This document shows, piece after piece, positions 2,672 to 43,900 of a DNA stretch of 64,000 bases (position 1 is the first letter of the stretch; the number at the start of each line of letters is the position of its first letter). A program made the position numbers and the translations under genes. Below the pieces are notes generated by a model, which saw only the letters and a program-made list of their open reading frames with translations, ran no database searches and had not been told where the DNA came from. The stretch covers positions 186,001 to 250,000 of IMG/VR virus record IMGVR_UViG_3300049001_000044, one strand, 5' to 3'.

Positions 2672-3295
2672 TTAAATCACTGCTGCGTTCTTCGCCACTG
2701 TGAGGATGGACTCAGGAGTCGCTTGCACGTTTAGGACGAGTAGCGTGGTGTTGTCAGCGAAGGAGAAGAGTGAGTGCTCTTTACTGGTGTTGATGAAGTG
2801 GGGGATGCCTTCTTCAAGATGAAGAGGTTTACCTTCGTGTAACCACACAACGTGGTTCCTCCTCCAATTGATAGGGACCATGATACGCATTGTCCCCGCA
2901 GGAAGTGCGAAACCATTGTCACGATGAGGAGGGAAGAATCCACCAGCGTCAAGACGAAGGAAGTGTGAGCGGCCCAAAAACCTGCCCCACATATCCAGGA
3001 AGCCGCCCAATCCTAATTCATCAACGATAGGTGTGCGTGTCTTGAAGCTAAACTCACCGAACTTGGTACCATTGAGTAGGTTGTACTCACGAAGAGAATC
3101 AAGGTCAGGGGTGCCAGAGTAATCACCATCCAACGACGTGACCGACAGCCCGTAGCGGTTAATGGGCTTACGTGGATTGTATTGCTTCCAATGAGGAGAG
3201 TTGGCCAGCACCTGCTTGATGTGGTGCATGTCAAAGGGCTGGCTTTTCATCTCGATTACGTCGCCAAAGTTGGCGACTAGGTCAGTGACAGTCAT
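2672..3295 (-). CDS. aspartyl/asparaginyl beta-hydroxylase-like 2OG-Fe(II) oxygenase
   Basis: FPPHRD motif, FINTSKEHS distal His, cupin-like pattern. Confidence 0.65.
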   Translation of the reverse strand: MTVTDLVANFGDVIEMKSQPFDMHHIKQVLANSPHWKQYNPRKPINRYGLSVTSLDGDYSGTPDLDSLREYNLLNGTKFGEFSFKTRTPIVDELGLGGFLDMWGRFLGRSHFLRLDAGGFFPPHRDNGFALPAGTMRIMVPINWRRNHVVWLHEGKPLHLEEGIPHFINTSKEHSLFSFADNTTLLVLNVQATPESILTVAKNAAVI

Positions 3296-3819
3296 TTGAT
3301 AGCGGTCAAGGCGTCCTTTGGATCAACGAGCACCAGGCGGTTCAGCGGAATCCGGCCCTCGGCGGTATCACGGCCGGAAGAGAAGAGCGATGATTCATTT
3401 CCGAAGCTACCGTCAGCAATGACTTTGAAGGTGCGGCCAGAAATGTGGACTTCGACATAGGTCTCTCGCTCGTCAAATATCTTCGCGTCAGATGGCATGA
3501 CATCTCCAATCACTACAACGGCACCACGTTGGAAGTATTGCGACGCGTGACCCGAATCGCTGTAGCAGCATCCGCCTTCCATCATGATGTACGCTTTGCC
3601 CTTCTCCACTCGCTTGCCCATCACAAACGCGTTATTTGCTTTTGCCCAAACGTACAACTTTTTCATAGCAGCTTGAGCTTGCGATTCACGCCATGGGTTA
3701 CTGCGATCGTCCTCTAGACCGCTCATGTGCTCCATGAATGCCTTGAGGTCAGCTTCATTGGAAATTTCTACGTGCTGTGCCGCGGCCTCACGCAGATTCA
3801 ACAGTTCTTTGATTAGCAT
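3292..3819 (-). CDS. hypothetical protein, possible head internal protein
   Basis: 175 aa; N-terminus MLIKELLNLRE resembles a capsid-targeting sequence. Confidence 0.65.
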   Translation of the reverse strand: MLIKELLNLREAAAQHVEISNEADLKAFMEHMSGLEDDRSNPWRESQAQAAMKKLYVWAKANNAFVMGKRVEKGKAYIMMEGGCCYSDSGHASQYFQRGAVVVIGDVMPSDAKIFDERETYVEVHISGRTFKVIADGSFGNESSLFSSGRDTAEGRIPLNRLVLVDPKDALTAIK

Positions 3820-3828
3820 CTTCTTTCC

Positions 3829-4260
3829 CTAGTATGGTAGAACGCAATATGCATTCACGTTATTTACATTCTCTGCCCACTCGCTAGTCAGTTGAAAACC
3901 GACCGACTCATAGGTCTTCCAGCTGTCTTTGCGAGGAAAGGACCAACAAAACTTACTCCCCTCACCCTGTCGGATGGTCGCGAAGAGTAGTTGTTTGGCA
4001 ATGCCTCTGCCTCGGTAGGAGGGGTTAACCCAAAGACCTCTACTACGATAGCTGCCGTCAGCACAAGGGTGACCACTGTTCACACCAACAATCTTTCCAT
4101 CTTGCATGAAAGCAAAGAATGTCGGCGAGACAAGTTGATTCTCTTGGTAGCCACCCAAGTACGTCATGCAGCTAATTGGTTCGATAGGATCCTTTCGATC
4201 AACCCACAGCTGTTCCTCCCAAATAGGGAGGATTTCAGCGTAGGTGATTTGGACTATCAC
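3829..4260 (-). CDS. GNAT acetyltransferase (TAG stop)
   Basis: LWVNPSYRGRGIAKQLL acetyl-CoA motif A. Confidence 0.8.
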   Translation of the reverse strand: MIVQITYAEILPIWEEQLWVDRKDPIEPISCMTYLGGYQENQLVSPTFFAFMQDGKIVGVNSGHPCADGSYRSRGLWVNPSYRGRGIAKQLLFATIRQGEGSKFCWSFPRKDSWKTYESVGFQLTSEWAENVNNVNAYCVLPY

Positions 4261-5654
4261 TTCTTAGCCTTCTTCGACTTCTGCGGTCTTTGCTTCTCTT
4301 CCAGATCATGCATGATCTTTGCAAGATCGGCAGCTGCTTTTGAACGAACAGTTGGGCTAATTGCATTCGCCTTGACCTTCTTCAGTCGGTCGACTTCAGC
4401 TTTCAGCTCGTCAGGAATTTGGACTTCAGTTGAAGCTGCGGGAGCTGCGCCTGCGTTACCAGACAAAATCTTAGCGACTTGGTCTGCGAAGTCATCACCT
4501 TTCGCTTTGATGTCTGCTGCGATCTCATCCGCAGATTTGTTCGCGACGTCTGCTGGCGGGGCAGCATTTGGATCTGCATTTGGATCTGGTTGAGCGTTAG
4601 GGTCAGCATCTTGATCGTCTTGATCGTCTGCCTGACCGCCTGCAAGACGTGTGAAGTTAGCATCAGCGTTCAACAGCTCAACGAGGTCATGATAGTGATG
4701 GTCAGCTTTGACTGGATCGCTGTAGAAGGCGTGGATGATAGCTGGGATCAACTTCTGGTTATCATGGATGCGAGGATCTTTAGTCAGGGCGGTGACTAGT
4801 TTGTTACGTAGCTCTTTCAATCCCTCAGGGGTGGTCGGCCAGCCTGAGCTGTCGCGGGAACCAGATACCCGGAAGAAAATCTTTCTTGCGTCATCTGCAA
4901 CAAGGCTAACAATCTTCATCTCACTAGCGGTGAGAGTGACTTTCTTAGGGGGCTGTTGCGTGCTATTAGCTGCATCGTCATTGTTACCGGGCACTGCGCT
5001 TGCTCCCTTGTCTCGTTCGTCTTGCTCAGCGCGGGCGTTGTTGATGACAGCGCGGACTGGGAATGCGGTGACGAACTTCTTGATGTTGAACTTTTCAAGA
5101 CGTTCCTCTCGATCGTCAAGCGCCCCAACACCTGCCCTTTGGATCGCATTCGCGTTGAGAGTTGCTACGTAGTACTTGTGGGAGATAACCGCTAGAAAAT
5201 CTTCACGAGCCTGTGTTAGGTCGTTTGCAGTACGGAGCTTCTCAGCGATAGAATGTGGGGCATTGAAGAGGACTGCGTATGGGCGCTTAGAGACAAGCGG
5301 TTTGTCCAGCGCTTTCAAGTCGAAGTCATTGCCGATCAGGAAGGCAACTGCATTATCCTGTTCGCCGTGAAGCGCTGGGAAGATGGCTTTAATCTGATCG
5401 TCAGTGAGTGCGTCGACGACTTTCTTTTCGCCGCCATTCGAAAGATACCGATCCTTGAGGTCAGCATCGTTGAGGAACATCACCACTCTGGTTGAGTCGC
5501 TTGGTACGGCAAAGATGCGACCAAGAACCTGCTCAGTGGCAGACTCACCACTTACTGCGTCAGGTTTTGCTTGGTCATCACCTTGCGGCCGCCCACCGCT
5601 CAACGTGTCAGCGTGGTTGTTGATACGGTTGATTAGTTCGAAGAGCTTTGCCAT
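4257..5654 (-). CDS. 465-aa hypothetical late/virion protein
   Basis: Late-type ATAAATA upstream; MAKLFEL N-terminus; DPNA low-complexity repeats. Confidence 0.7.
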   Translation of the reverse strand: MAKLFELINRINNHADTLSGGRPQGDDQAKPDAVSGESATEQVLGRIFAVPSDSTRVVMFLNDADLKDRYLSNGGEKKVVDALTDDQIKAIFPALHGEQDNAVAFLIGNDFDLKALDKPLVSKRPYAVLFNAPHSIAEKLRTANDLTQAREDFLAVISHKYYVATLNANAIQRAGVGALDDREERLEKFNIKKFVTAFPVRAVINNARAEQDERDKGASAVPGNNDDAANSTQQPPKKVTLTASEMKIVSLVADDARKIFFRVSGSRDSSGWPTTPEGLKELRNKLVTALTKDPRIHDNQKLIPAIIHAFYSDPVKADHHYHDLVELLNADANFTRLAGGQADDQDDQDADPNAQPDPNADPNAAPPADVANKSADEIAADIKAKGDDFADQVAKILSGNAGAAPAASTEVQIPDELKAEVDRLKKVKANAISPTVRSKAAADLAKIMHDLEEKQRPQKSKKAKK

Positions 5655-9111: not shown

Positions 9112-9186
9112 TGGTGGTTCCAGCGGGGATCGAACCCGCGACCTTAGGTTTTAGAGACCCGGCTCTGCCAACTGAGCTATGGAACC
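9112..9186 (-). tRNA. tRNA-Sup(CUA) amber suppressor 1
   Basis: Cloverleaf GGTTCCA/TGGAACC, loop CT-CTA-AA, A73, encoded CCA. Confidence 0.85.
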
Positions 9187-9264
9187 TGGTGGCGTGTATC
9201 GGACTCGAACCGATGACCAAGGAGTTTAGAGGTCCCTGCTCTACCAAACCTGAGCTAACACGCC
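9187..9264 (-). tRNA. tRNA-Sup(CUA) amber suppressor 2
   Basis: Cloverleaf GGCGTGT/ACACGCC, loop CT-CTA-AA, A73, encoded CCA. Confidence 0.85.
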
Positions 9265-9687: not shown

Positions 9688-9981
9688 TTACTGACTAGCC
9701 TCGTACTGTTCCTGTGCCTGCGCCTTCATGGAGATACGGCCATCGATCATGTACGTTGCCTGATTACGGAGACCGTCTCGTTCGCTGCGCAGCCTTTCTA
9801 CTTCTTTCCATGCTGGCCAGTAGGTGCCTTCACGGGTGCTAGATTTTGCGAATACTTTCTGTGCATCATTGAATTGCTTCCTTACGTCGCGGATTTTCTG
9901 CGAGAGGTCTTTGTAGTCTGCTTTCCACTGAGCGGCTGCGGCGATGTAGGTTTCACGGGAATTGAAGTTGAAGTAGGTCAT
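9688..9981 (-). CDS. coiled-coil hypothetical protein
   Basis: 97-aa ORF with GGAG RBS. Confidence 0.7.
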   Translation of the reverse strand: MTYFNFNSRETYIAAAAQWKADYKDLSQKIRDVRKQFNDAQKVFAKSSTREGTYWPAWKEVERLRSERDGLRNQATYMIDGRISMKAQAQEQYEASQ

Positions 9982-9996: not shown

Positions 9997-10545
9997 TTAT
10001 TTGAGAAATTTCTTTGCTGCTTGAATGAGTCGCTTGGTTTTGATTTTGTAGCTCTGCGAATCCTTACCACCAAACATAGATGCGTTGGCGTTGATCTCGG
10101 CCCATGCAGTGAAGAAAAGGATGGGTGCGAGTGGGTGCTTGATCAGCTCGAGTAGTTCATCACCACGAGCAGTGTGAAAGTCCATGTCTCGACGAATGAG
10201 GTTGGTAGTGAAGAGGTCGTCGGGAAACAAATGACTGTACTGCTGAGCAGAGATGTTAGCATGATCTGGGAAGTGGCGCTTGCCATCTTCATCAATCGTC
10301 AACGTCAAGTGCTTGCCACAATCGTGATAGACGTGGTATGGTTGAAGCACCGAAGCTGGAGGAAGGCTAAACTTGGAGTAGATTTGTTGAAGCTCAGTTG
10401 GAGCTTCTCCTTTCTCAAGTTCATCGATCAGCTCTTTGTACTTCTCGTGCACAAGTTGGCCGTGTTGGAGCATGTTCAGGTTAGGAGCCTGAAGACAAGC
10501 TTCCATTGCGAGGTGGAGTTCTTCAAGGGAGTTTTCGTACTTCAT
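9997..10545 (-). CDS. HD-domain phosphohydrolase-like protein
   Basis: Start MKYENS; YHDCGK and HANIS motifs; ATGA-coupled to the upstream Pth gene. Confidence 0.65.
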   Translation of the reverse strand: MKYENSLEELHLAMEACLQAPNLNMLQHGQLVHEKYKELIDELEKGEAPTELQQIYSKFSLPPASVLQPYHVYHDCGKHLTLTIDEDGKRHFPDHANISAQQYSHLFPDDLFTTNLIRRDMDFHTARGDELLELIKHPLAPILFFTAWAEINANASMFGGKDSQSYKIKTKRLIQAAKKFLK

Positions 10546-10886
10546 GCTGCGTCTCCTTGCGTAGGCAGCTTCCAAAGCTGCAAGCCTTTCAGGAGATTGC
10601 GATTCTCTTCAGTGAGAATGCAAGCAATCGCAGTCAATCCCCAATCTTTGTACGGTTCGTGGAACTCGGCAGTTGGGATTCCATTCTCATTGAGCGTGGC
10701 GCGAAGCTGTTCCAACTTCTGCTTGTCTCGAATGGTGAGATGGATGTACGACGGATGATGGTCAGCAGGGCGACCAAAAGTGTATGCGTGTTCGACGGCG
10801 GCATGGCCAGCTTGAACAGCTTGTTGCGCGAGTGGGATGTCTCGGCGCGAGATGGTGTACAGGTAGGTTTTGGAAATCTACAACAT
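10542..10886 (-). CDS. Pth2-like peptidyl-tRNA hydrolase with in-frame TAG at codon 3
   Basis: GGAG RBS, then ATG TTG TAG ATT TCC AAA... open for 115 codons to TGA; translation has RRDIPLAQQAVQAGHAA and EPYKDWGLTAIA. Confidence 0.75.
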
Positions 10887-10919
10887 TTTTGTTTTCTCCG
10901 TTAGGTTTTAAAAGTCAGC

Positions 10920-11033
10920 GTTGGTGCGAAAATTCGCATCTAGCAGCGTGAGTGAACGTACAGGTTCCCGGTCCAGTCAAATGGGTTAAATTGGGATGTC
11001 GACGGCGCTAACCCATCAACATTTCGCACCAAC
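10920..11033 (-). other. structured 5' leader closed by a 12-bp stem
   Basis: GTTGGTGCGAAA/TTTCGCACCAAC inverted repeat; inner GATGGGTT/AACCCATT stem. Confidence 0.55.
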
Positions 11034-11050
11034 TATTTACTGACAGGAAT

Positions 11051-11080
11051 ATTTTATCACTTCTGATTCCTAATGAAAAC
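11051..11080 (-). promoter_or_regulatory. early-type promoter GTTTTC-N18-TAAAAT
   Basis: Repeated motif upstream of the Pth leader. Confidence 0.6.
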
Positions 11081-40934: not shown

Positions 40935-40943
40935 TCATCTCTC

Positions 40944-43900
40944 CTATGTGTTTGTGCGTCCAGTTGTGAACTGGAACGCTGTTGGGATTTGGTTCATGTT
41001 GTTTGGCGGTGGTGCTGCTGTCGCCGAGGTATTCGCAGAAGGTTTCTGATCGACCAACGACTGAAGGAAAGCAACTGCCTGTGCCATGTTGGTTGCGATG
41101 CTTTGAAGCTGTGCAAGAGCTGCTTCATCCTTGACATCGAGAAGGTTCTCTCCATCCTGCGTGAGGGTATTTATACCTTTGGTCAGCGCGTCGGTAGCTG
41201 AATCCACCGTCTGAATTTGCTGAGTTGGAGGCGCAATCGGCTGCACTGAAGTGTTCAGTGGGGTTGCCATCGTAGAAGCAAATGGCGAGATCGAATCCAG
41301 CAGAGGAGTCGAAGTCGAAGCATCTGTTGCTGTCTTGATAGTCGTCGAGAGATCGCCCATCGTCGTCGCAAGAGGATTCAGTGAAGAGGTCGAAGTCATG
41401 GTTGTTGCCAAGGACTTCAACGCATCGCTTTGCTTGCCGGTTGCCTTCGCTTGGATTACACCTGCCTCTACGAAGACAGCCTTGATCGCGTCTGCGATTG
41501 CCGTTGCCAGCGTAGGAGTAGCTTGATTAATTCCATCGACGATAGGATTCGCCGGCTTGTCATCAGAGGTTGGCTTCGCAACAGTAGACTTGTCATCCTT
41601 CTGGGGATTGATCATCTGTCCAACGGCCTGGCCGAGCTGCGCAGGTGTCATGTCCTTCTTAGGAGATGCTTGCTGCGCATCTGGCTTTGATTGCGCTGGC
41701 GTAGGAGTTGGGGCAGGCGTAGAAGCTTGCTGCGCATCTGGCTTCTTGTCGCTAACAACTGCGTCAGCGATTGCTTCACCACCAGTCTTGCCTAGCCAGC
41801 TGCCAAGTGCACCGCCAACAGCACCACCAATAAGAGCGCCAACGCCAGGAATTGGGATCAATACCTGACCGATTGCTGCACCTGCGAGACTAGCCGCCAC
41901 ACCACCAGCCGCACCGGTAACTGCGCCAGTCTTCTTCACAGTGGCTTGCTTATCAGTAATCTCGCCCTTCTTACGCTGTTCTTCTGCATCGTCGATGTCG
42001 CCCCACGCTTGATACGCTGCGATGATACCAGCCAGTGGGCCAGCTGCCTTACCCAAAATACCAGCTCCACCCTTGATGAGGCTACCAGCCGCTGATGAAG
42101 CTCCACGAAGCGCACCAGGTGCCGCCTCAGCAACACCAGTTGCTGCACCTCGCACGGCGCCCACCGCAGTTCTACCAGCGTTCATCACGCTTCCAGCTGC
42201 ACCTTCAACTGCGCCGGCGACACGAGGTGCAGCACCACGTACGGCTCCCCATGTACTGCTTGCCGCACCACGAACAGCATTAGCCGCAGTGCTAGCACCA
42301 GTACGCGCAGCGTTGAGTCCGCCAGATCCAATGTTCTTCAGCGCCGACAACAGTCCGCCTGGACCACCCATCAGCAACGATGTGCGAGAAAGCTGGAATG
42401 CGAATGCGACAAGTGCAGCGGTGGAACCGACGATTGCACCAAGGAATGCGTTGTTGATAACACTAGAGACTTGGTTGATCGCCTGACCCAGCACAGCAAC
42501 GGACTCGTTACCTTTCGCTGCTTCGCTCGCCTTCTTCTGCTCGTCAGGATTTACCTGTGCTCCAGCTTCCTTCGCCATCTGGATCTGTTCACCAGATCGC
42601 TGAATTTGCTGCGTTTGGCCGCTAGGCTGAAGATCTTGGCGAAGCTCGTTGTAGATGTCGCCCATTGCGCCATTACCGCTAGCACCATATCCTTCATTCG
42701 TTCTCTTTTCAAACTCCTGGCCAATTTGGCCAGTCAGTTCGGTAAATCTTGCCTGCTCGTCCTTGCTTCTTCTACCCTTAGATGCGAGCCTGTAGACTTC
42801 CATCGCTTGGTCTGATCCCATGCCAGCGAGCATTGCCTGCTGCATAAGCTTGGCTGCATCACCAGTACGTTCAGCGAGACGACCTCTTTGCTGTTCCTGC
42901 TGAGCCTTTACCAGCTCTTGTGCTTGCTGAATTTCCAGACCTTGCGCAACGTACTTAGTACGCAGTTGCACGAGCTCTTGCGCGTACATGTTCCTACGCT
43001 GCGTGTCCATACCCAGCATGATGCCAAAGGCGCCATCGGATTGGAACAGAGTCTTGTTAAGCGCTGCAAATTCCTGCGCAGAAATCTTGACCATTCCAGA
43101 TACTTTCTGGAATTGATCCATCATGGTGTCAGCGTACTTGTTCAGCTCGCCTGGATCCCTGATGTTGATACCTGCAGAGATTGCCGATTCGACAGTTGGG
43201 CCGATAGTTTCGGCCGCCTGCTTCATCGTGTAACCATACTTCTGGAACGTCTTCTGCATCATGCCCATGGCGGCCTGGAACTTCTCAGGGCCATAGATCG
43301 CAAGCATCCGCTTGTTCTCATCCATCAACGCAACGGTCTCCTTGAAGGAGAGACCCAACGCTACAGATGCTTTGTTTACTTGCAGATAGCTGGCAGGGAT
43401 TTGGGCGATGTTGAAGTCAGAAATCTCTTCCCACATCTCCTTGATCTTACGAGCTGCGAACTTGAACGCCGCGGTCGAAGAGAGGAAGTCTGTCACCATC
43501 TTCTTGATGCTGTCCATCGCAGAGAACTGACCAGCTGCGTTGTTCATTGAGCCAATGAACCTACCTAGGGCAGTTTGGAACAGCTGAGTGTTGCGATCGA
43601 TGTTATGCGCAGTGTTACCGAACGTCGATTCAAGGTTTGCGATTTCCTGAGCAAGACCTTCCCAGTCAATGTTCTCGAGGTTACCACGCATCTGGCCATT
43701 TGCGTCAAGGACGTTATGGGCTTCGTTCTGTGGATGGAACAAACCGCGCTCTTGCAACATAGCTGCCATTCTAGCGACCGCATCACGGTTGATAGATGCA
43801 CCATCTTGACCCATCGCAGCTCTAGTTGCTTCTTCAGGAGATAGGTGATCACCCGGTGAGACGTTGAACTGACGTGCGTTGAAAAGGTCACCAAACGATT

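What the first reader, a model, noticed from the sequence alone, without database searches (positions are those of the whole stretch)
10542..10886. Hidden peptidyl-tRNA hydrolase gene gated by an amber codon at position 3 (ATG-TTG-TAG)
Seen: a GGAG RBS, then ATG TTG TAG ATT TCC AAA ACC TAC..., open for 115 codons to a TGA that overlaps the ATG of the HD gene. The ORF track misses it. The translation (YLYTISRRDIPLAQQAVQAGHAA...FHEPYKDWGLTAIA) fits the Pth2 fold. Established: two-codon minigenes such as lambda bar cause peptidyl-tRNA drop-off, which only Pth recycles. Inference: without readthrough this mRNA is a minigene. With the phage suppressor tRNAs, or when RF1 is limiting, it makes Pth and allows translational coupling to the HD protein. 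That would be a compact termination-sensing feedback circuit.
Basis: partly seen in the sequence, partly recalled or inferred. Interest (0 to 1): 0.85.

Follow-up and report, generated by a model that had tools for sequence, protein, structure and literature searches.

The report
Suppressor-tRNA-gated phage tRNA-hydrolase genes
A giant phage gene for a Pth2-like tRNA hydrolase starts with a stop codon that only the phage's own suppressor tRNA should read through; the same gate recurs in about 100 related phages and in a partner gene, which gives these "orphan" suppressor tRNAs a specific target.

Summary
On the minus strand, GGAG-N9-ATG TTG TAG is followed in frame by 111 codons of a Pth2-fold protein. 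Two CUA-anticodon tRNAs lie 1.3 kb downstream on the same strand.

It is not an error, a pseudogene or genome-wide recoding. In 131 non-redundant relatives, 94 have a 1-4 codon ATG leader followed by a stop (88 TAG, 4 TGA, 2 TAA). A purine follows that stop in 92 of 94.

The residues directly after the stop are conserved while their codons vary synonymously, and no canonical start codon is available there. TAG-gated loci carry CUA tRNAs. Two independently derived TGA-gated loci carry UCA tRNAs instead.

The downstream HD-domain partner gene carries the same gate in most relatives, and a TGA gate in a UCA-tRNA phage. Some phages, including XacN1, fuse the two genes. Of 111 such TAG gates in 1.48 Mb, 100 fall in these two families.

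The gate is also present, mis-annotated or unannotated, in cultured phages GAP32, BF, ME3, Arash, RsoM2USA and XacN1. The XacN1 and RsoM2USA papers named no gene read by their suppressor tRNAs.

The minigene and drop-off feedback idea is not. Why these two enzymes are gated remains inferred.

The parts
10896..10899 (-). Shine-Dalgarno core GGAG, 9 nt upstream of the leader ATG
   Evidence: Sequence. In relatives an SD-like core lies 4-9 nt upstream of the leader start in 73 of the 74 loci where one is detectable.
10878..10886 (-). Leader ATG TTG followed by the gate codon TAG (10880-10878); the next base is A
   Evidence: The leader-plus-stop architecture is conserved in 94 of 131 relatives. 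A purine follows the stop in 92 of 94, against 64% for ordinary N-terminal codons and 44% at genuine TAG terminators.
10542..10877 (-). Pth2-like protein coding region after the gate (111 codons plus TGA 10544-10542)
   Evidence: Pfam PTH2 E = 0.0029, below the curated cut-off. Model pLDDT 92.8. Foldseek top hits are Pth2 structures. The family profile hits solved Pth2 chains. Residues 3-13 are conserved with synonymous codon variation in 55 gated relatives.
9997..10545 (-). Partner gene (182 aa, HD-motif hydrolase). Its ATG overlaps the TGA of the gated gene, and it has its own SD AAGGAG at 10558-10553.
   Evidence: Invariant H28, H74-D75 and D120. Model pLDDT 96. Best fold matches are 3wfo-3wfr 'tRNA processing enzyme', TMq 0.60-0.65. 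It lies downstream on the same strand in 53 loci and is fused to the Pth2-like domain in L074, L086, L150 and XacN1. It is itself gated in most relatives.
9187..9264 (-). Suppressor tRNA, anticodon CUA, type I, A73, encoded CCA
   Evidence: ARAGORN, Rfam tRNA 56 bits, sequence.
9112..9186 (-). Second suppressor tRNA, anticodon CUA, type I, A73, encoded CCA
   Evidence: ARAGORN, Rfam tRNA 58 bits, cloverleaf fold.
11051..11079 (-). Promoter-like site TTTTCA-17-TAAAAT with an extended TG. This is only a consensus match.
   Evidence: The number of such sites in the region is no higher than in shuffles, so the evidence is weak.
10914..11044 (-). Strongly folding 5' leader between the promoter-like site and the SD. 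Role unknown and not conserved in relatives.
   Evidence: MFE -52.2 kcal/mol, z = -3.6. Upstream regions of relatives differ.

Best explanation
This is a translational gate operated by a suppressor tRNA.

Proposed mechanism. Ribosomes start at the SD-positioned leader ATG. After one or two codons they meet a UAG in a context that favours read-through (a purine follows). Without a charged phage tRNA(CUA), release factor 1 ends translation and no protein is made. With the phage's own suppressor tRNA, the ribosome inserts an amino acid in a variable N-terminal leader, where its identity does not matter, and goes on to make a 113-residue Pth2-like protein.

Same rule for the partner. The HD-domain partner gene follows the same logic across the family. 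It carries its own identical gate, or is fused behind the gate, or (as in this window) directly abuts the gated gene.

What follows. The orphan suppressor tRNAs of these standard-code jumbo phages act as dedicated trans-activators of a two-gene module whose products resemble enzymes that work on tRNA 3' ends.

Shown here:
- the anatomy of the gate and its conservation;
- translation of the codons directly after the stop;
- co-variation of gate codon and tRNA anticodon;
- the restriction of the gate to two protein families;
- the Pth2 fold.

Inferred, not shown:
- that read-through actually happens;
- that the Pth2-like protein hydrolyses peptidyl- or N-blocked aminoacyl-tRNA;
- the purpose of the gate.

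My preferred purpose, at about 40%, is that the gate doses these enzymes in proportion to suppressor activity, so they clear by-products of stop-codon read-through such as dropped-off or non-stop peptidyl-tRNA. This would resemble the way prfB and arfA are controlled by the failure they repair. Two other purposes remain open: a timer that waits until the phage tRNA array is functional, and negative feedback on the suppressor.
For: Anatomy.

Conservation: 94 of 131 non-redundant relatives are gated (88 TAG, 4 TGA, 2 TAA). Leaders are 1-4 codons long in 87 of 94.

Ribosome placement: SD cores lie 4-9 nt upstream of the leader start in 73 of 74.

Translation after the stop: K3, Y5, L6, Y7, I9, S10, R11, R12 and D13 are conserved with free synonymous change. 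The first canonical start lies at residue 16 or later in 50 of 55 loci.

Context: a purine follows the gate in 92 of 94, against 64% for N-terminal codons and 44% at real TAG terminators.

tRNA linkage:
- 46 of 58 long TAG-gated loci have a CUA tRNA within 8 kb and none has a UCA tRNA.
- Both long TGA-gated loci (L120, L124) have UCA tRNAs and no CUA tRNA. They sit in separate clades of the family tree.
- The nearest suppressor is always on the same strand (62 of 62), at a median distance of 0.9 kb.

Second family: the HD partner is gated by TAG in most relatives and by TGA in L124.

Specificity: 111 TAG gates, against 8 TAA and 24 TGA, in 1.48 Mb. One hundred of the 111 are Pth2-like, HD or their fusion; the rest are at background level. 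TAG still terminates 13% of control ORFs, and this gene is the only one of its kind in the 64-kb window.

Cultured phages with the gate: GAP32, BF, ME3, Arash, RsoM2USA, XacN1.

Fold and homology.

Rescue context: a tmRNA gene lies within 8 kb in 29 of 91 long loci.
Against: - There is no direct evidence of read-through: no proteomics and no ribosome profiling.
- 12 of 58 long TAG-gated loci show no CUA tRNA within 8 kb. The two TAA-gated members show no UUA tRNA.
- 31 of 131 members have plain ATG starts, and 16 of those still sit near a CUA tRNA.
- The phylogenetically controlled test of gate presence against suppressor presence had no power, with only 4 independent pairs.
- The codon/anticodon co-switch rests on two loci for the Pth2-like gene and one for the HD gene.
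- The window protein scores below Pfam's PTH2 cut-off (18.2 against 23 bits). The Lys of the Pth2 'GK' motif is replaced by Gln, so hydrolase activity is not assured.
- In the window the HD gene has its own SD, so it may be expressed independently of the gate.
- The proposed purpose (clean-up) is circumstantial.
Confidence: 0.72

Rival explanations
1. Without read-through, the ATG-TTG-TAG leader acts as a lambda bar-like minigene. Its peptidyl-tRNA drops off and must be recycled by Pth, so the gene is a feedback loop that senses termination or drop-off and makes Pth in response.
For: The window leader is a two-codon minigene with a good SD. The product has a Pth2 fold. Minigene-induced drop-off and its dependence on Pth are established knowledge for lambda bar (recalled, not tested here).
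Against: Leader length and sequence are not conserved. Thirteen of 94 leaders are ATG-TAG, which yields no peptidyl-tRNA, and others have up to 8 codons. The HD gene, which has nothing to do with Pth, carries the same gate. The stop codon tracks the tRNA anticodon rather than anything about the leader's last sense codon.
Confidence: 0.08
2. No read-through is needed. Ribosomes terminate at the leader stop and re-initiate, or initiate de novo, at the adjacent non-canonical codon (ATT, ATC, GTT), so the upstream mini-ORF only tunes initiation.
For: The codon after the stop is ATT, ATC or ATA in 41 of 94 loci and GTN in 25 of 94. AUU is a known weak initiator (infC; recalled).
Against: In 16 of 94 loci the next codon is AAC. 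Others are ACC, ACA, GGT, AGC, GAC, CAC or CTG, none of which initiates. SD spacing fits the leader ATG and not the downstream codon. Re-initiation does not explain why the stop is TAG in 88 of 94, nor why it becomes TGA exactly where the tRNA is UCA.
Confidence: 0.07
3. The gate senses release-factor activity and not the tRNA. Read-through by near-cognate host tRNAs rises when RF1 (or RF2 for TGA) is depleted or inhibited during infection.
For: TAG is read only by RF1 and TGA only by RF2. A stop this early, followed by a purine, would be leaky. Not tested here.
Against: It does not explain the tight same-strand linkage to suppressor tRNAs (62 of 62, median 0.9 kb). It does not explain the matching of codon and anticodon in independent lineages.
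Confidence: 0.06
4. The stop is non-functional. It is a sequencing error, a pseudogene, or a neutral in-frame stop that accumulated because a suppressor tRNA had already 'detoxified' TAG, as in incipient genome recoding.
For: Borges et al. propose that stops accumulate after a suppressor is acquired. Seven distant members carry a second in-frame TAG.
Against: The same position class (codon 2-6) recurs in two specific families across homologs down to 30% identity. The rest of the protein is under purifying selection. No other family exceeds background. The context of the gate differs from that of real terminators.
Confidence: 0.04

Closest known systems
Stop-codon recoding in phages with suppressor tRNAs (TAG or TGA reassigned in late and lysis genes; Ivanova 2014, recalled from memory; Borges et al. 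preprint 10.1101/2021.08.26.457843)
   Same: A phage-encoded suppressor tRNA makes in-frame stops readable, and this is proposed as post-transcriptional control of particular genes. The codon matches the anticodon.
   Different: In recoded phages, 26-71% of genes carry in-frame stops scattered along them. Here the genome uses the standard code, and TAG terminates 13% of ORFs. The stop sits at codon 2-6 of just two gene families, with a dedicated mini-leader and a read-through context. That preprint does not contain the word 'hydrolase'.
Autoregulatory recoding of translation-quality genes: prfB (in-frame UGA, +1 frameshift sensing RF2) and arfA (non-stop mRNA sensing tmRNA capacity). Recalled knowledge.
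   Same: An early in-frame stop, or a defective message, makes expression of a translation-rescue factor depend on the state of termination or rescue.
   Different: The input here is a trans-acting phage tRNA, not the product itself. No frameshift is involved. Feedback by the product is not shown.
Lambda bar minigenes and Pth (recalled knowledge)
   Same: In the window, a two-codon ORF with an SD is followed by a stop, and there is a link to peptidyl-tRNA hydrolase.
   Different: The leader is not conserved as a minigene: lengths run from 1 to 8 codons and include ATG-TAG. The downstream frame is a conserved protein. The HD gene carries the same gate.
PTH2-family proteins of group 2/3 jumbo phages (Iyer et al. 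2021, PMC7824862)
   Same: The same protein superfamily in the same kind of phage, with a proposed role in ribosome rescue and tRNA recycling.
   Different: That paper mentions neither suppressors nor stop codons. The gate, the HD partner and fusion, and the tRNA co-variation are not described there.
Engineered amber-suppressor gates in synthetic circuits (e.g. PMC13276491)
   Same: A sup-tRNA is used as an orthogonal translational ON switch for a gene that carries an early nonsense codon.
   Different: Those are artificial. This would be a natural and widespread version.

Membership tests
Pth2 peptidyl-tRNA hydrolase superfamily (PF01981) | Pth2 alpha/beta fold | tested here: met
   Model pLDDT 92.8. 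The 14 best PDB matches are 13 Pth2 chains (1wn2, 2zv3, 3erj, 1rlk, 1q7s, 1xty) plus 2gax (Atu0240, deposited as a protein of unknown function), at TM 0.62-0.75 and probability 1.00.
Pth2 peptidyl-tRNA hydrolase superfamily (PF01981) | Sequence match to the family model above the curated cut-off | tested here: not met
   The window protein scores 18.2 bits against a cut-off of 23. Remote homology is nevertheless real: 46 of 80 diverse members hit PTH2 at E <= 0.01, and the family profile hits solved Pth2 chains at E = 1.5e-6 to 9e-4. It is best called a divergent Pth2-like clade.
Pth2 peptidyl-tRNA hydrolase superfamily (PF01981) | Conserved active-site motifs: RxDL, GK, QxxHA and the Asp of DAG. 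The assignment of catalytic roles is recalled from the S. solfataricus work and was not verified in the held literature. | tested here: inconclusive
   The HMM alignment maps D13, Q22, H25 and T82 onto the Pth2 motifs. Invariant E74 maps onto the DAG Asp. The GK Lys is replaced by Q18/Q19 together with a two-residue deletion.
Pth2 peptidyl-tRNA hydrolase superfamily (PF01981) | Hydrolysis of peptidyl-tRNA or N-acyl-aminoacyl-tRNA | not testable with these tools
   Requires an enzyme assay or pth(ts) complementation.
Alternatively coded (TAG- or TGA-recoded) phage | In-frame reassigned stops in a large share of genes, and low coding density under the standard code | tested here: not met
   Only this gene in the 64-kb window. 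One hundred of 111 gates in 1.48 Mb lie in two families. TAG terminates 13% of control ORFs.
Alternatively coded (TAG- or TGA-recoded) phage | A phage-encoded suppressor tRNA cognate to the in-frame stop | tested here: met
   Two CUA tRNAs in the window. CUA with TAG and UCA with TGA across loci.
Lambda bar-type minigene | A conserved very short ORF whose last sense codon and length drive peptidyl-tRNA drop-off | tested here: not met
   Leader lengths are 1 to 8 codons, 13 of 94 are ATG-TAG, and the sequences vary.
HD-domain metal-dependent phosphohydrolase (partner gene) | H...HD...D metal-binding motif | tested here: met
   H28, H74-D75 and D120 are invariant in 43 sequences.
HD-domain metal-dependent phosphohydrolase (partner gene) | Match to a curated HD family model or to a solved HD structure | tested here: inconclusive
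   No Pfam or NCBIfam hit and no PDB hit by sequence. By fold, the best matches are 3wfo-3wfr 'tRNA processing enzyme' at probability 1.00 and TMq 0.60-0.65. Matches to HD proteins (PhnZ, YfbR, PgpH) are weak.

The most novel reading that the evidence does not exclude
The suppressor tRNAs found in many standard-code jumbo phages (XacN1, RsoM2USA, GAP32, BF, ME3, Arash and hundreds of uncultured ones) are not relics or general read-through agents. They are dedicated trans-acting translational activators of a conserved two-gene module (a Pth2-like gene plus an HD hydrolase gene) that works on tRNA 3' ends. Together they form a natural, portable 'tRNA-key / stop-codon-lock' circuit whose key and lock have co-switched from amber to opal at least twice.
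Probability: 0.55. Interest if true: 0.85.

Novelty: new variant of a known kind. Interest (0 to 1): 0.8.

Why it matters
Suppressor tRNAs have been noted in cultured jumbo phages for years. The XacN1 authors state that they could not identify any target gene (PMC5852040). The RsoM2USA paper offers only genome-wide UAG counts (PMC8504454). This finding supplies a specific, conserved and testable target.

It also shows that current annotation pipelines systematically miss or truncate these genes. It points to a natural orthogonal translational switch: a mini-leader, a stop codon and a cognate tRNA. That switch regulates enzymes of the tRNA acceptor end, next to phage tmRNA and tRNA arrays.

The question can be tested directly in tractable phage-host pairs: Salmonella/Arash, Cronobacter/GAP32, Serratia/BF and Acinetobacter/ME3.

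Tried and rejected
1. I first read the 'Q' near the N-terminus of database homologs (MLQIS..., MKSQISK...) as evidence that TAG corresponds to Gln. The DNA shows those Qs are TAGs translated under a TAG-to-Q code by the gene callers, so I withdrew the claim.
2. Apparent TAG-split ORF pairs at 56.7-63 kb are antisense to plus-strand genes. The GNAT at 4263-3829 is a complete protein ending in TAG. I therefore rejected genome-wide recoding.
3. The narrow profile A1 found no solved relative. The broader profile A2 did.
4. Amino-acid identity of the suppressors is inconclusive. The nearest canonical tRNAs are only 72-79% identical and belong to mixed isotypes, and discriminator bases vary.
5. The phylogenetically controlled association of gate presence with suppressor presence gave only 4 independent pairs, so it has no power.
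6. The upstream 5' leader structure is not conserved in relatives. Only a TAAATAG motif recurs.
7. Atu_ph07, which has a UCA suppressor, was not reached by three tblastn queries.
With A1 it gave only two phage-like MAG contigs, both TAG-gated and both with a CUA tRNA.
9. Pfam and NCBIfam gave no hit on the HD partner.
10. I could not verify the Pth2 catalytic residues in the held literature.
11. Four literature searches found no description of this gate.
Full report
**1. The observation**

The feature is on the minus strand. GGAG (10899-10896) is followed after 9 nt by ATG TTG TAG (10886-10878). An uninterrupted frame of 111 codons follows (10877-10545), ending in TGA (10544-10542). That TGA overlaps the ATG of the next gene as ATGA.

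A mechanical ORF list shows only a 57-aa TTG fragment. ARAGORN finds 26 tRNAs in the window. Two of them, adjacent to each other, have anticodon CUA and lie at 9264-9112 on the same strand, 1.3 kb downstream. Rfam confirms both as tRNAs. They are type I, have A73 and encode their CCA.

The window is identical to a 343-kb IMG/VR jumbo-phage contig. It has no close relative among GenBank phages.

**2. Not genome-wide recoding**

- A codon-usage scan of all stop-to-stop segments found only this one gene with three properties together: it is preceded by TAG, coding signal starts right after the stop, and no canonical start is nearby.
- Other apparent TAG splits are antisense to plus-strand genes at 56.7-63 kb. 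Others are complete genes that simply end in TAG, such as the GNAT at 4263-3829.
- In 624 control ORFs from the related loci, TAG is still the terminator in 13%.

**3. The stop is conserved**

I fetched 179 loci from viral and metagenome collections, which reduce to 131 non-redundant ones. Of these, 94 have the same architecture: a start codon (ATG in 89, GTG in 5), then 0-7 further codons, then a stop (88 TAG, 4 TGA, 2 TAA). The leader including its start codon is 1-4 codons long in 87 of 94.

I first thought that database homologs had Gln at the gate position. Their DNA shows TAG, translated as Q by gene callers that used a TAG-to-Q code. I withdrew that inference.

**4. The stretch after the stop is translated, and not from an internal start**

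- In 55 gated relatives with at least 60% identity, residues K3, Y5, L6, Y7, I9, S10, R11, R12 and D13 are conserved as amino acids while their codons vary freely. Examples are AAG 32 / AAA 20, TAC 29 / TAT 24 and GAC 29 / GAT 26.
- The first in-frame ATG, GTG or TTG lies at residue 16 or later in 50 of the 55. That would remove strand β1 and the invariant D13.
- SD-like cores sit 4-9 nt (mode 6) upstream of the leader start in 73 of the 74 loci where one can be detected.
- The codon after the stop is often AAC, ACC, ACA or GGT, which cannot initiate.

**5. The stop is in a read-through context**

The base after the gate is a purine in 92 of 94 loci. The comparison values are 64% for the first base of codons 2-6 of ordinary genes and 44% after genuine TAG terminators in the same loci. 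The binomial p is 5e-16, without correction for relatedness. A purine after UAG favours amber suppression in E. coli; I recall this from Bossi 1983 and Miller & Albertini 1983 and did not check it here.

TAG-gated genes also avoid TAG as their own terminator: TGA 55, TAA 16, TAG 2.

**6. Linkage and co-variation with suppressor tRNAs**

- Of 58 TAG-gated loci with long flanks, 46 have a CUA tRNA within 8 kb and none has a UCA tRNA.
- Both TGA-gated loci with long flanks (L120, L124) have UCA tRNAs and no CUA tRNA.
- On the family tree, L124 lies inside a well-supported 35-member clade that excludes L120. These are therefore two independent switches of codon and anticodon together.
- The nearest suppressor is on the same strand in 62 of 62 cases, at a median distance of 0.9 kb.
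- Suppressors make up 98 of the 395 tRNAs in these loci.
- A phylogenetically controlled test of gate presence against suppressor presence had no power, with 4 independent pairs.
- The two TAA-gated members show no UUA tRNA in their flanks. This is unexplained.

**7. A second gated family**

The downstream gene (10545-9997, 182 aa) has invariant H28, H74-D75 and D120, which is an HD motif. Its model is confident, with pLDDT 96. Its best structural matches are the 'tRNA processing enzyme' entries 3wfo-3wfr (probability 1.00, TMq 0.60-0.65), followed weakly by HD hydrolases. I believe 3wfo-3wfr are a class II tRNA nucleotidyltransferase, but that is from memory.

Homologs lie downstream on the same strand in 53 loci. 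In L074, L086 and L150 they are fused in front of the Pth2-like domain.

In most relatives this HD gene has its own gate of the same kind. Examples are SD-N6-ATG ACG TAG GTT (L108), ATG TCA TAG ATT (L018) and ATG TCG TAG AAC (L117). In the UCA-tRNA phage L124 the gate is TGA: ATG ACA TGG TCG TGA GTC.

In the window, in L017 and in phage Arash, the HD gene is not gated itself, but it overlaps or abuts the gated Pth2-like gene. In the window it has its own SD (AAGGAG-N7-ATG).

**8. Specificity**

I scanned 1.48 Mb for the pattern 'SD, ATG, at most 5 codons, stop, then at least 80 open codons'. It occurs 111 times with TAG, 8 times with TAA and 24 times with TGA.

Of the 111 TAG cases, 60 are Pth2-like, 37 are HD and 3 are fusions. 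The remaining 11 match the background set by the TAA and TGA controls (7 and 20 unrelated hits). One small conserved pair (L080, L155) may be an exception.

**9. What the protein is**

- Pfam PTH2 matches the window protein weakly (E = 0.0029, 18.2 bits against a cut-off of 23).
- The AlphaFold model built on 51 sequences has pLDDT 92.8.
- Foldseek against the PDB returns almost only Pth2 structures at the top: PH1539, MJ0051, AF2095, TA0108, human Bit1 and S. solfataricus Pth2, together with Atu0240 (unknown function), at TM 0.62-0.75.
- A profile search of 1.84 billion representative proteins finds 1,799 clusters.
- Of 80 diverse members, 46 hit Pfam PTH2. Their profile hits solved Pth2 chains at E = 1.5e-6 to 9e-4.
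- That alignment places D13, Q22, H25 and T82 on Pth2 motifs and places the invariant E74 on the Asp of the 'DAG' motif. The Lys of the 'GK' motif is replaced by Gln.

I therefore call it a divergent Pth2-like clade. Its hydrolase activity is plausible but untested. Iyer et al. 2021 already noted PTH2 proteins in jumbo phages, without any mention of suppressors or stop codons.

**10. Cultured phages**

| Phage | Gate found | Annotation and tRNA |
|---|---|---|
| GAP32 | ATG GCA CAA TAG AAT | only a truncated ORF annotated; annotated Sup-tRNA 3 kb away |
| Serratia BF | ATG ACG CAC TAG AAT | gene unannotated; annotated tRNA-Sup 3.3 kb away |
| Acinetobacter ME3 | ATG ACT TAG ATT | annotated CTA-anticodon tRNA about 0.4 kb away |
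| Salmonella Arash | ATG CTG TAG AAC | its CUA tRNA is labelled tRNA-Phe |
| RsoM2USA | Pth2-like: ATG TTG TAG ATT; HD: ATG AAA TCG TAG ATC | Pth2-like gene unannotated; HD annotated from an internal ATG |
| XacN1 | AGAGGA-N8-ATG AAG TAG ACC | heads ORF364, the HD-Pth2-like fusion, which is annotated from an internal ATG |

RaK2 has a plain ATG start.

The XacN1 paper states that no target of its two CUA suppressors could be found by extending annotated ORFs past their amber stops. That approach cannot see a two-codon upstream leader. The RsoM2USA paper gives only genome-wide UAG counts. Four literature searches found no description of this gate. The Borges et al. preprint on phage recoding does not mention a hydrolase.

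**11. Interpretation**

The best-supported reading is a suppressor-tRNA-dependent translational gate on a two-gene module. The following are shown:

- the anatomy of the gate;
- its conservation;
- translation of the codons after the stop;
- the read-through context;
- the matching of codon and anticodon in two protein families;
- the restriction to those two families.

Actual read-through, the enzymatic activities and the purpose are inferred.

A tmRNA gene lies within 8 kb in 29 of 91 long loci, and a Pth gene is annotated nearby in phage BF. These place the module in a translation-rescue neighbourhood. For that reason I favour, weakly, the idea that the gate doses the two enzymes in proportion to suppressor activity so that they clear read-through by-products. 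A timer or checkpoint for the phage tRNA array, and negative feedback on the suppressor, remain open.

**12. Verdict**

The finding is real and conserved, and apparently undescribed. It is a new variant of phage stop-codon control. It gives orphan phage suppressor tRNAs a concrete target and can be tested in existing laboratory phages.

Noticed in passing
window 3292-4263 (-): A complete GNAT acetyltransferase ORF (4263-3829) ends in TAG, and the next ORF (3828-3292, 178 aa, no family hit) is in the same frame. Amber read-through would fuse the two.
   Followed up: partly
window 40935-40946 (-): The 1288-aa gene (44810-40944) ends in TAG, with an in-frame TGA three codons later. This looks like a back-up stop in a phage that carries amber suppressors.
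   Followed up: no
window 10914-11044 (-): A strongly folding 5' leader (z = -3.6), closed by GGTGCGAAA...TTTCGCACC, lies upstream of the gated gene. It is not conserved in relatives. They show a recurrent TAAATAG motif 30-45 nt upstream of the leader ATG, possibly a phage promoter element.
   Followed up: partly
L080 ~5613 (+) and L155 ~9238 (+): A possible third gated family: 129-134 aa proteins with the motif RIHHW...HDHPWWF, preceded by SD-ATG-leader-TAG-A.
   Followed up: no
L186 3810-3884 (Salmonella phage Arash, OQ632216): A tRNA that ARAGORN reads with anticodon CUA is annotated as tRNA-Phe in GenBank. The Pth2-like gene is annotated there only as a 50-aa C-terminal fragment called peptidyl-tRNA hydrolase.
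   Followed up: partly
L062 (short) and L138 7977-7979: Two family members are gated by TAA, but no UUA-anticodon tRNA is present in their flanks.
   Followed up: partly
L144, L151, L156, L158-L161: Seven distant members carry a second in-frame TAG at about residue 36-42 of the Pth2-like domain.
   Followed up: no
34 of 131 non-redundant loci (29 of the 91 with long flanks), e.g. L105 and L124; L181 1-77: Phage-encoded tmRNA genes lie within 8 kb of the module in about a third of the long loci. Serratia phage BF has an annotated peptidyl-tRNA hydrolase (BF_0391) 5 kb upstream. The module sits in a translation-rescue neighbourhood.
   Followed up: partly
L090 990-1063: ARAGORN calls a tRNA with a four-base anticodon (cttc) next to tRNA-Lys(CTT), in a locus whose Pth2-like gene is TGA-gated.
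   Followed up: no
window 9688-9981 (-): The 97-aa gene after the HD partner recurs in 23 related loci. Its function is unknown and it has no family hit.
   Followed up: no
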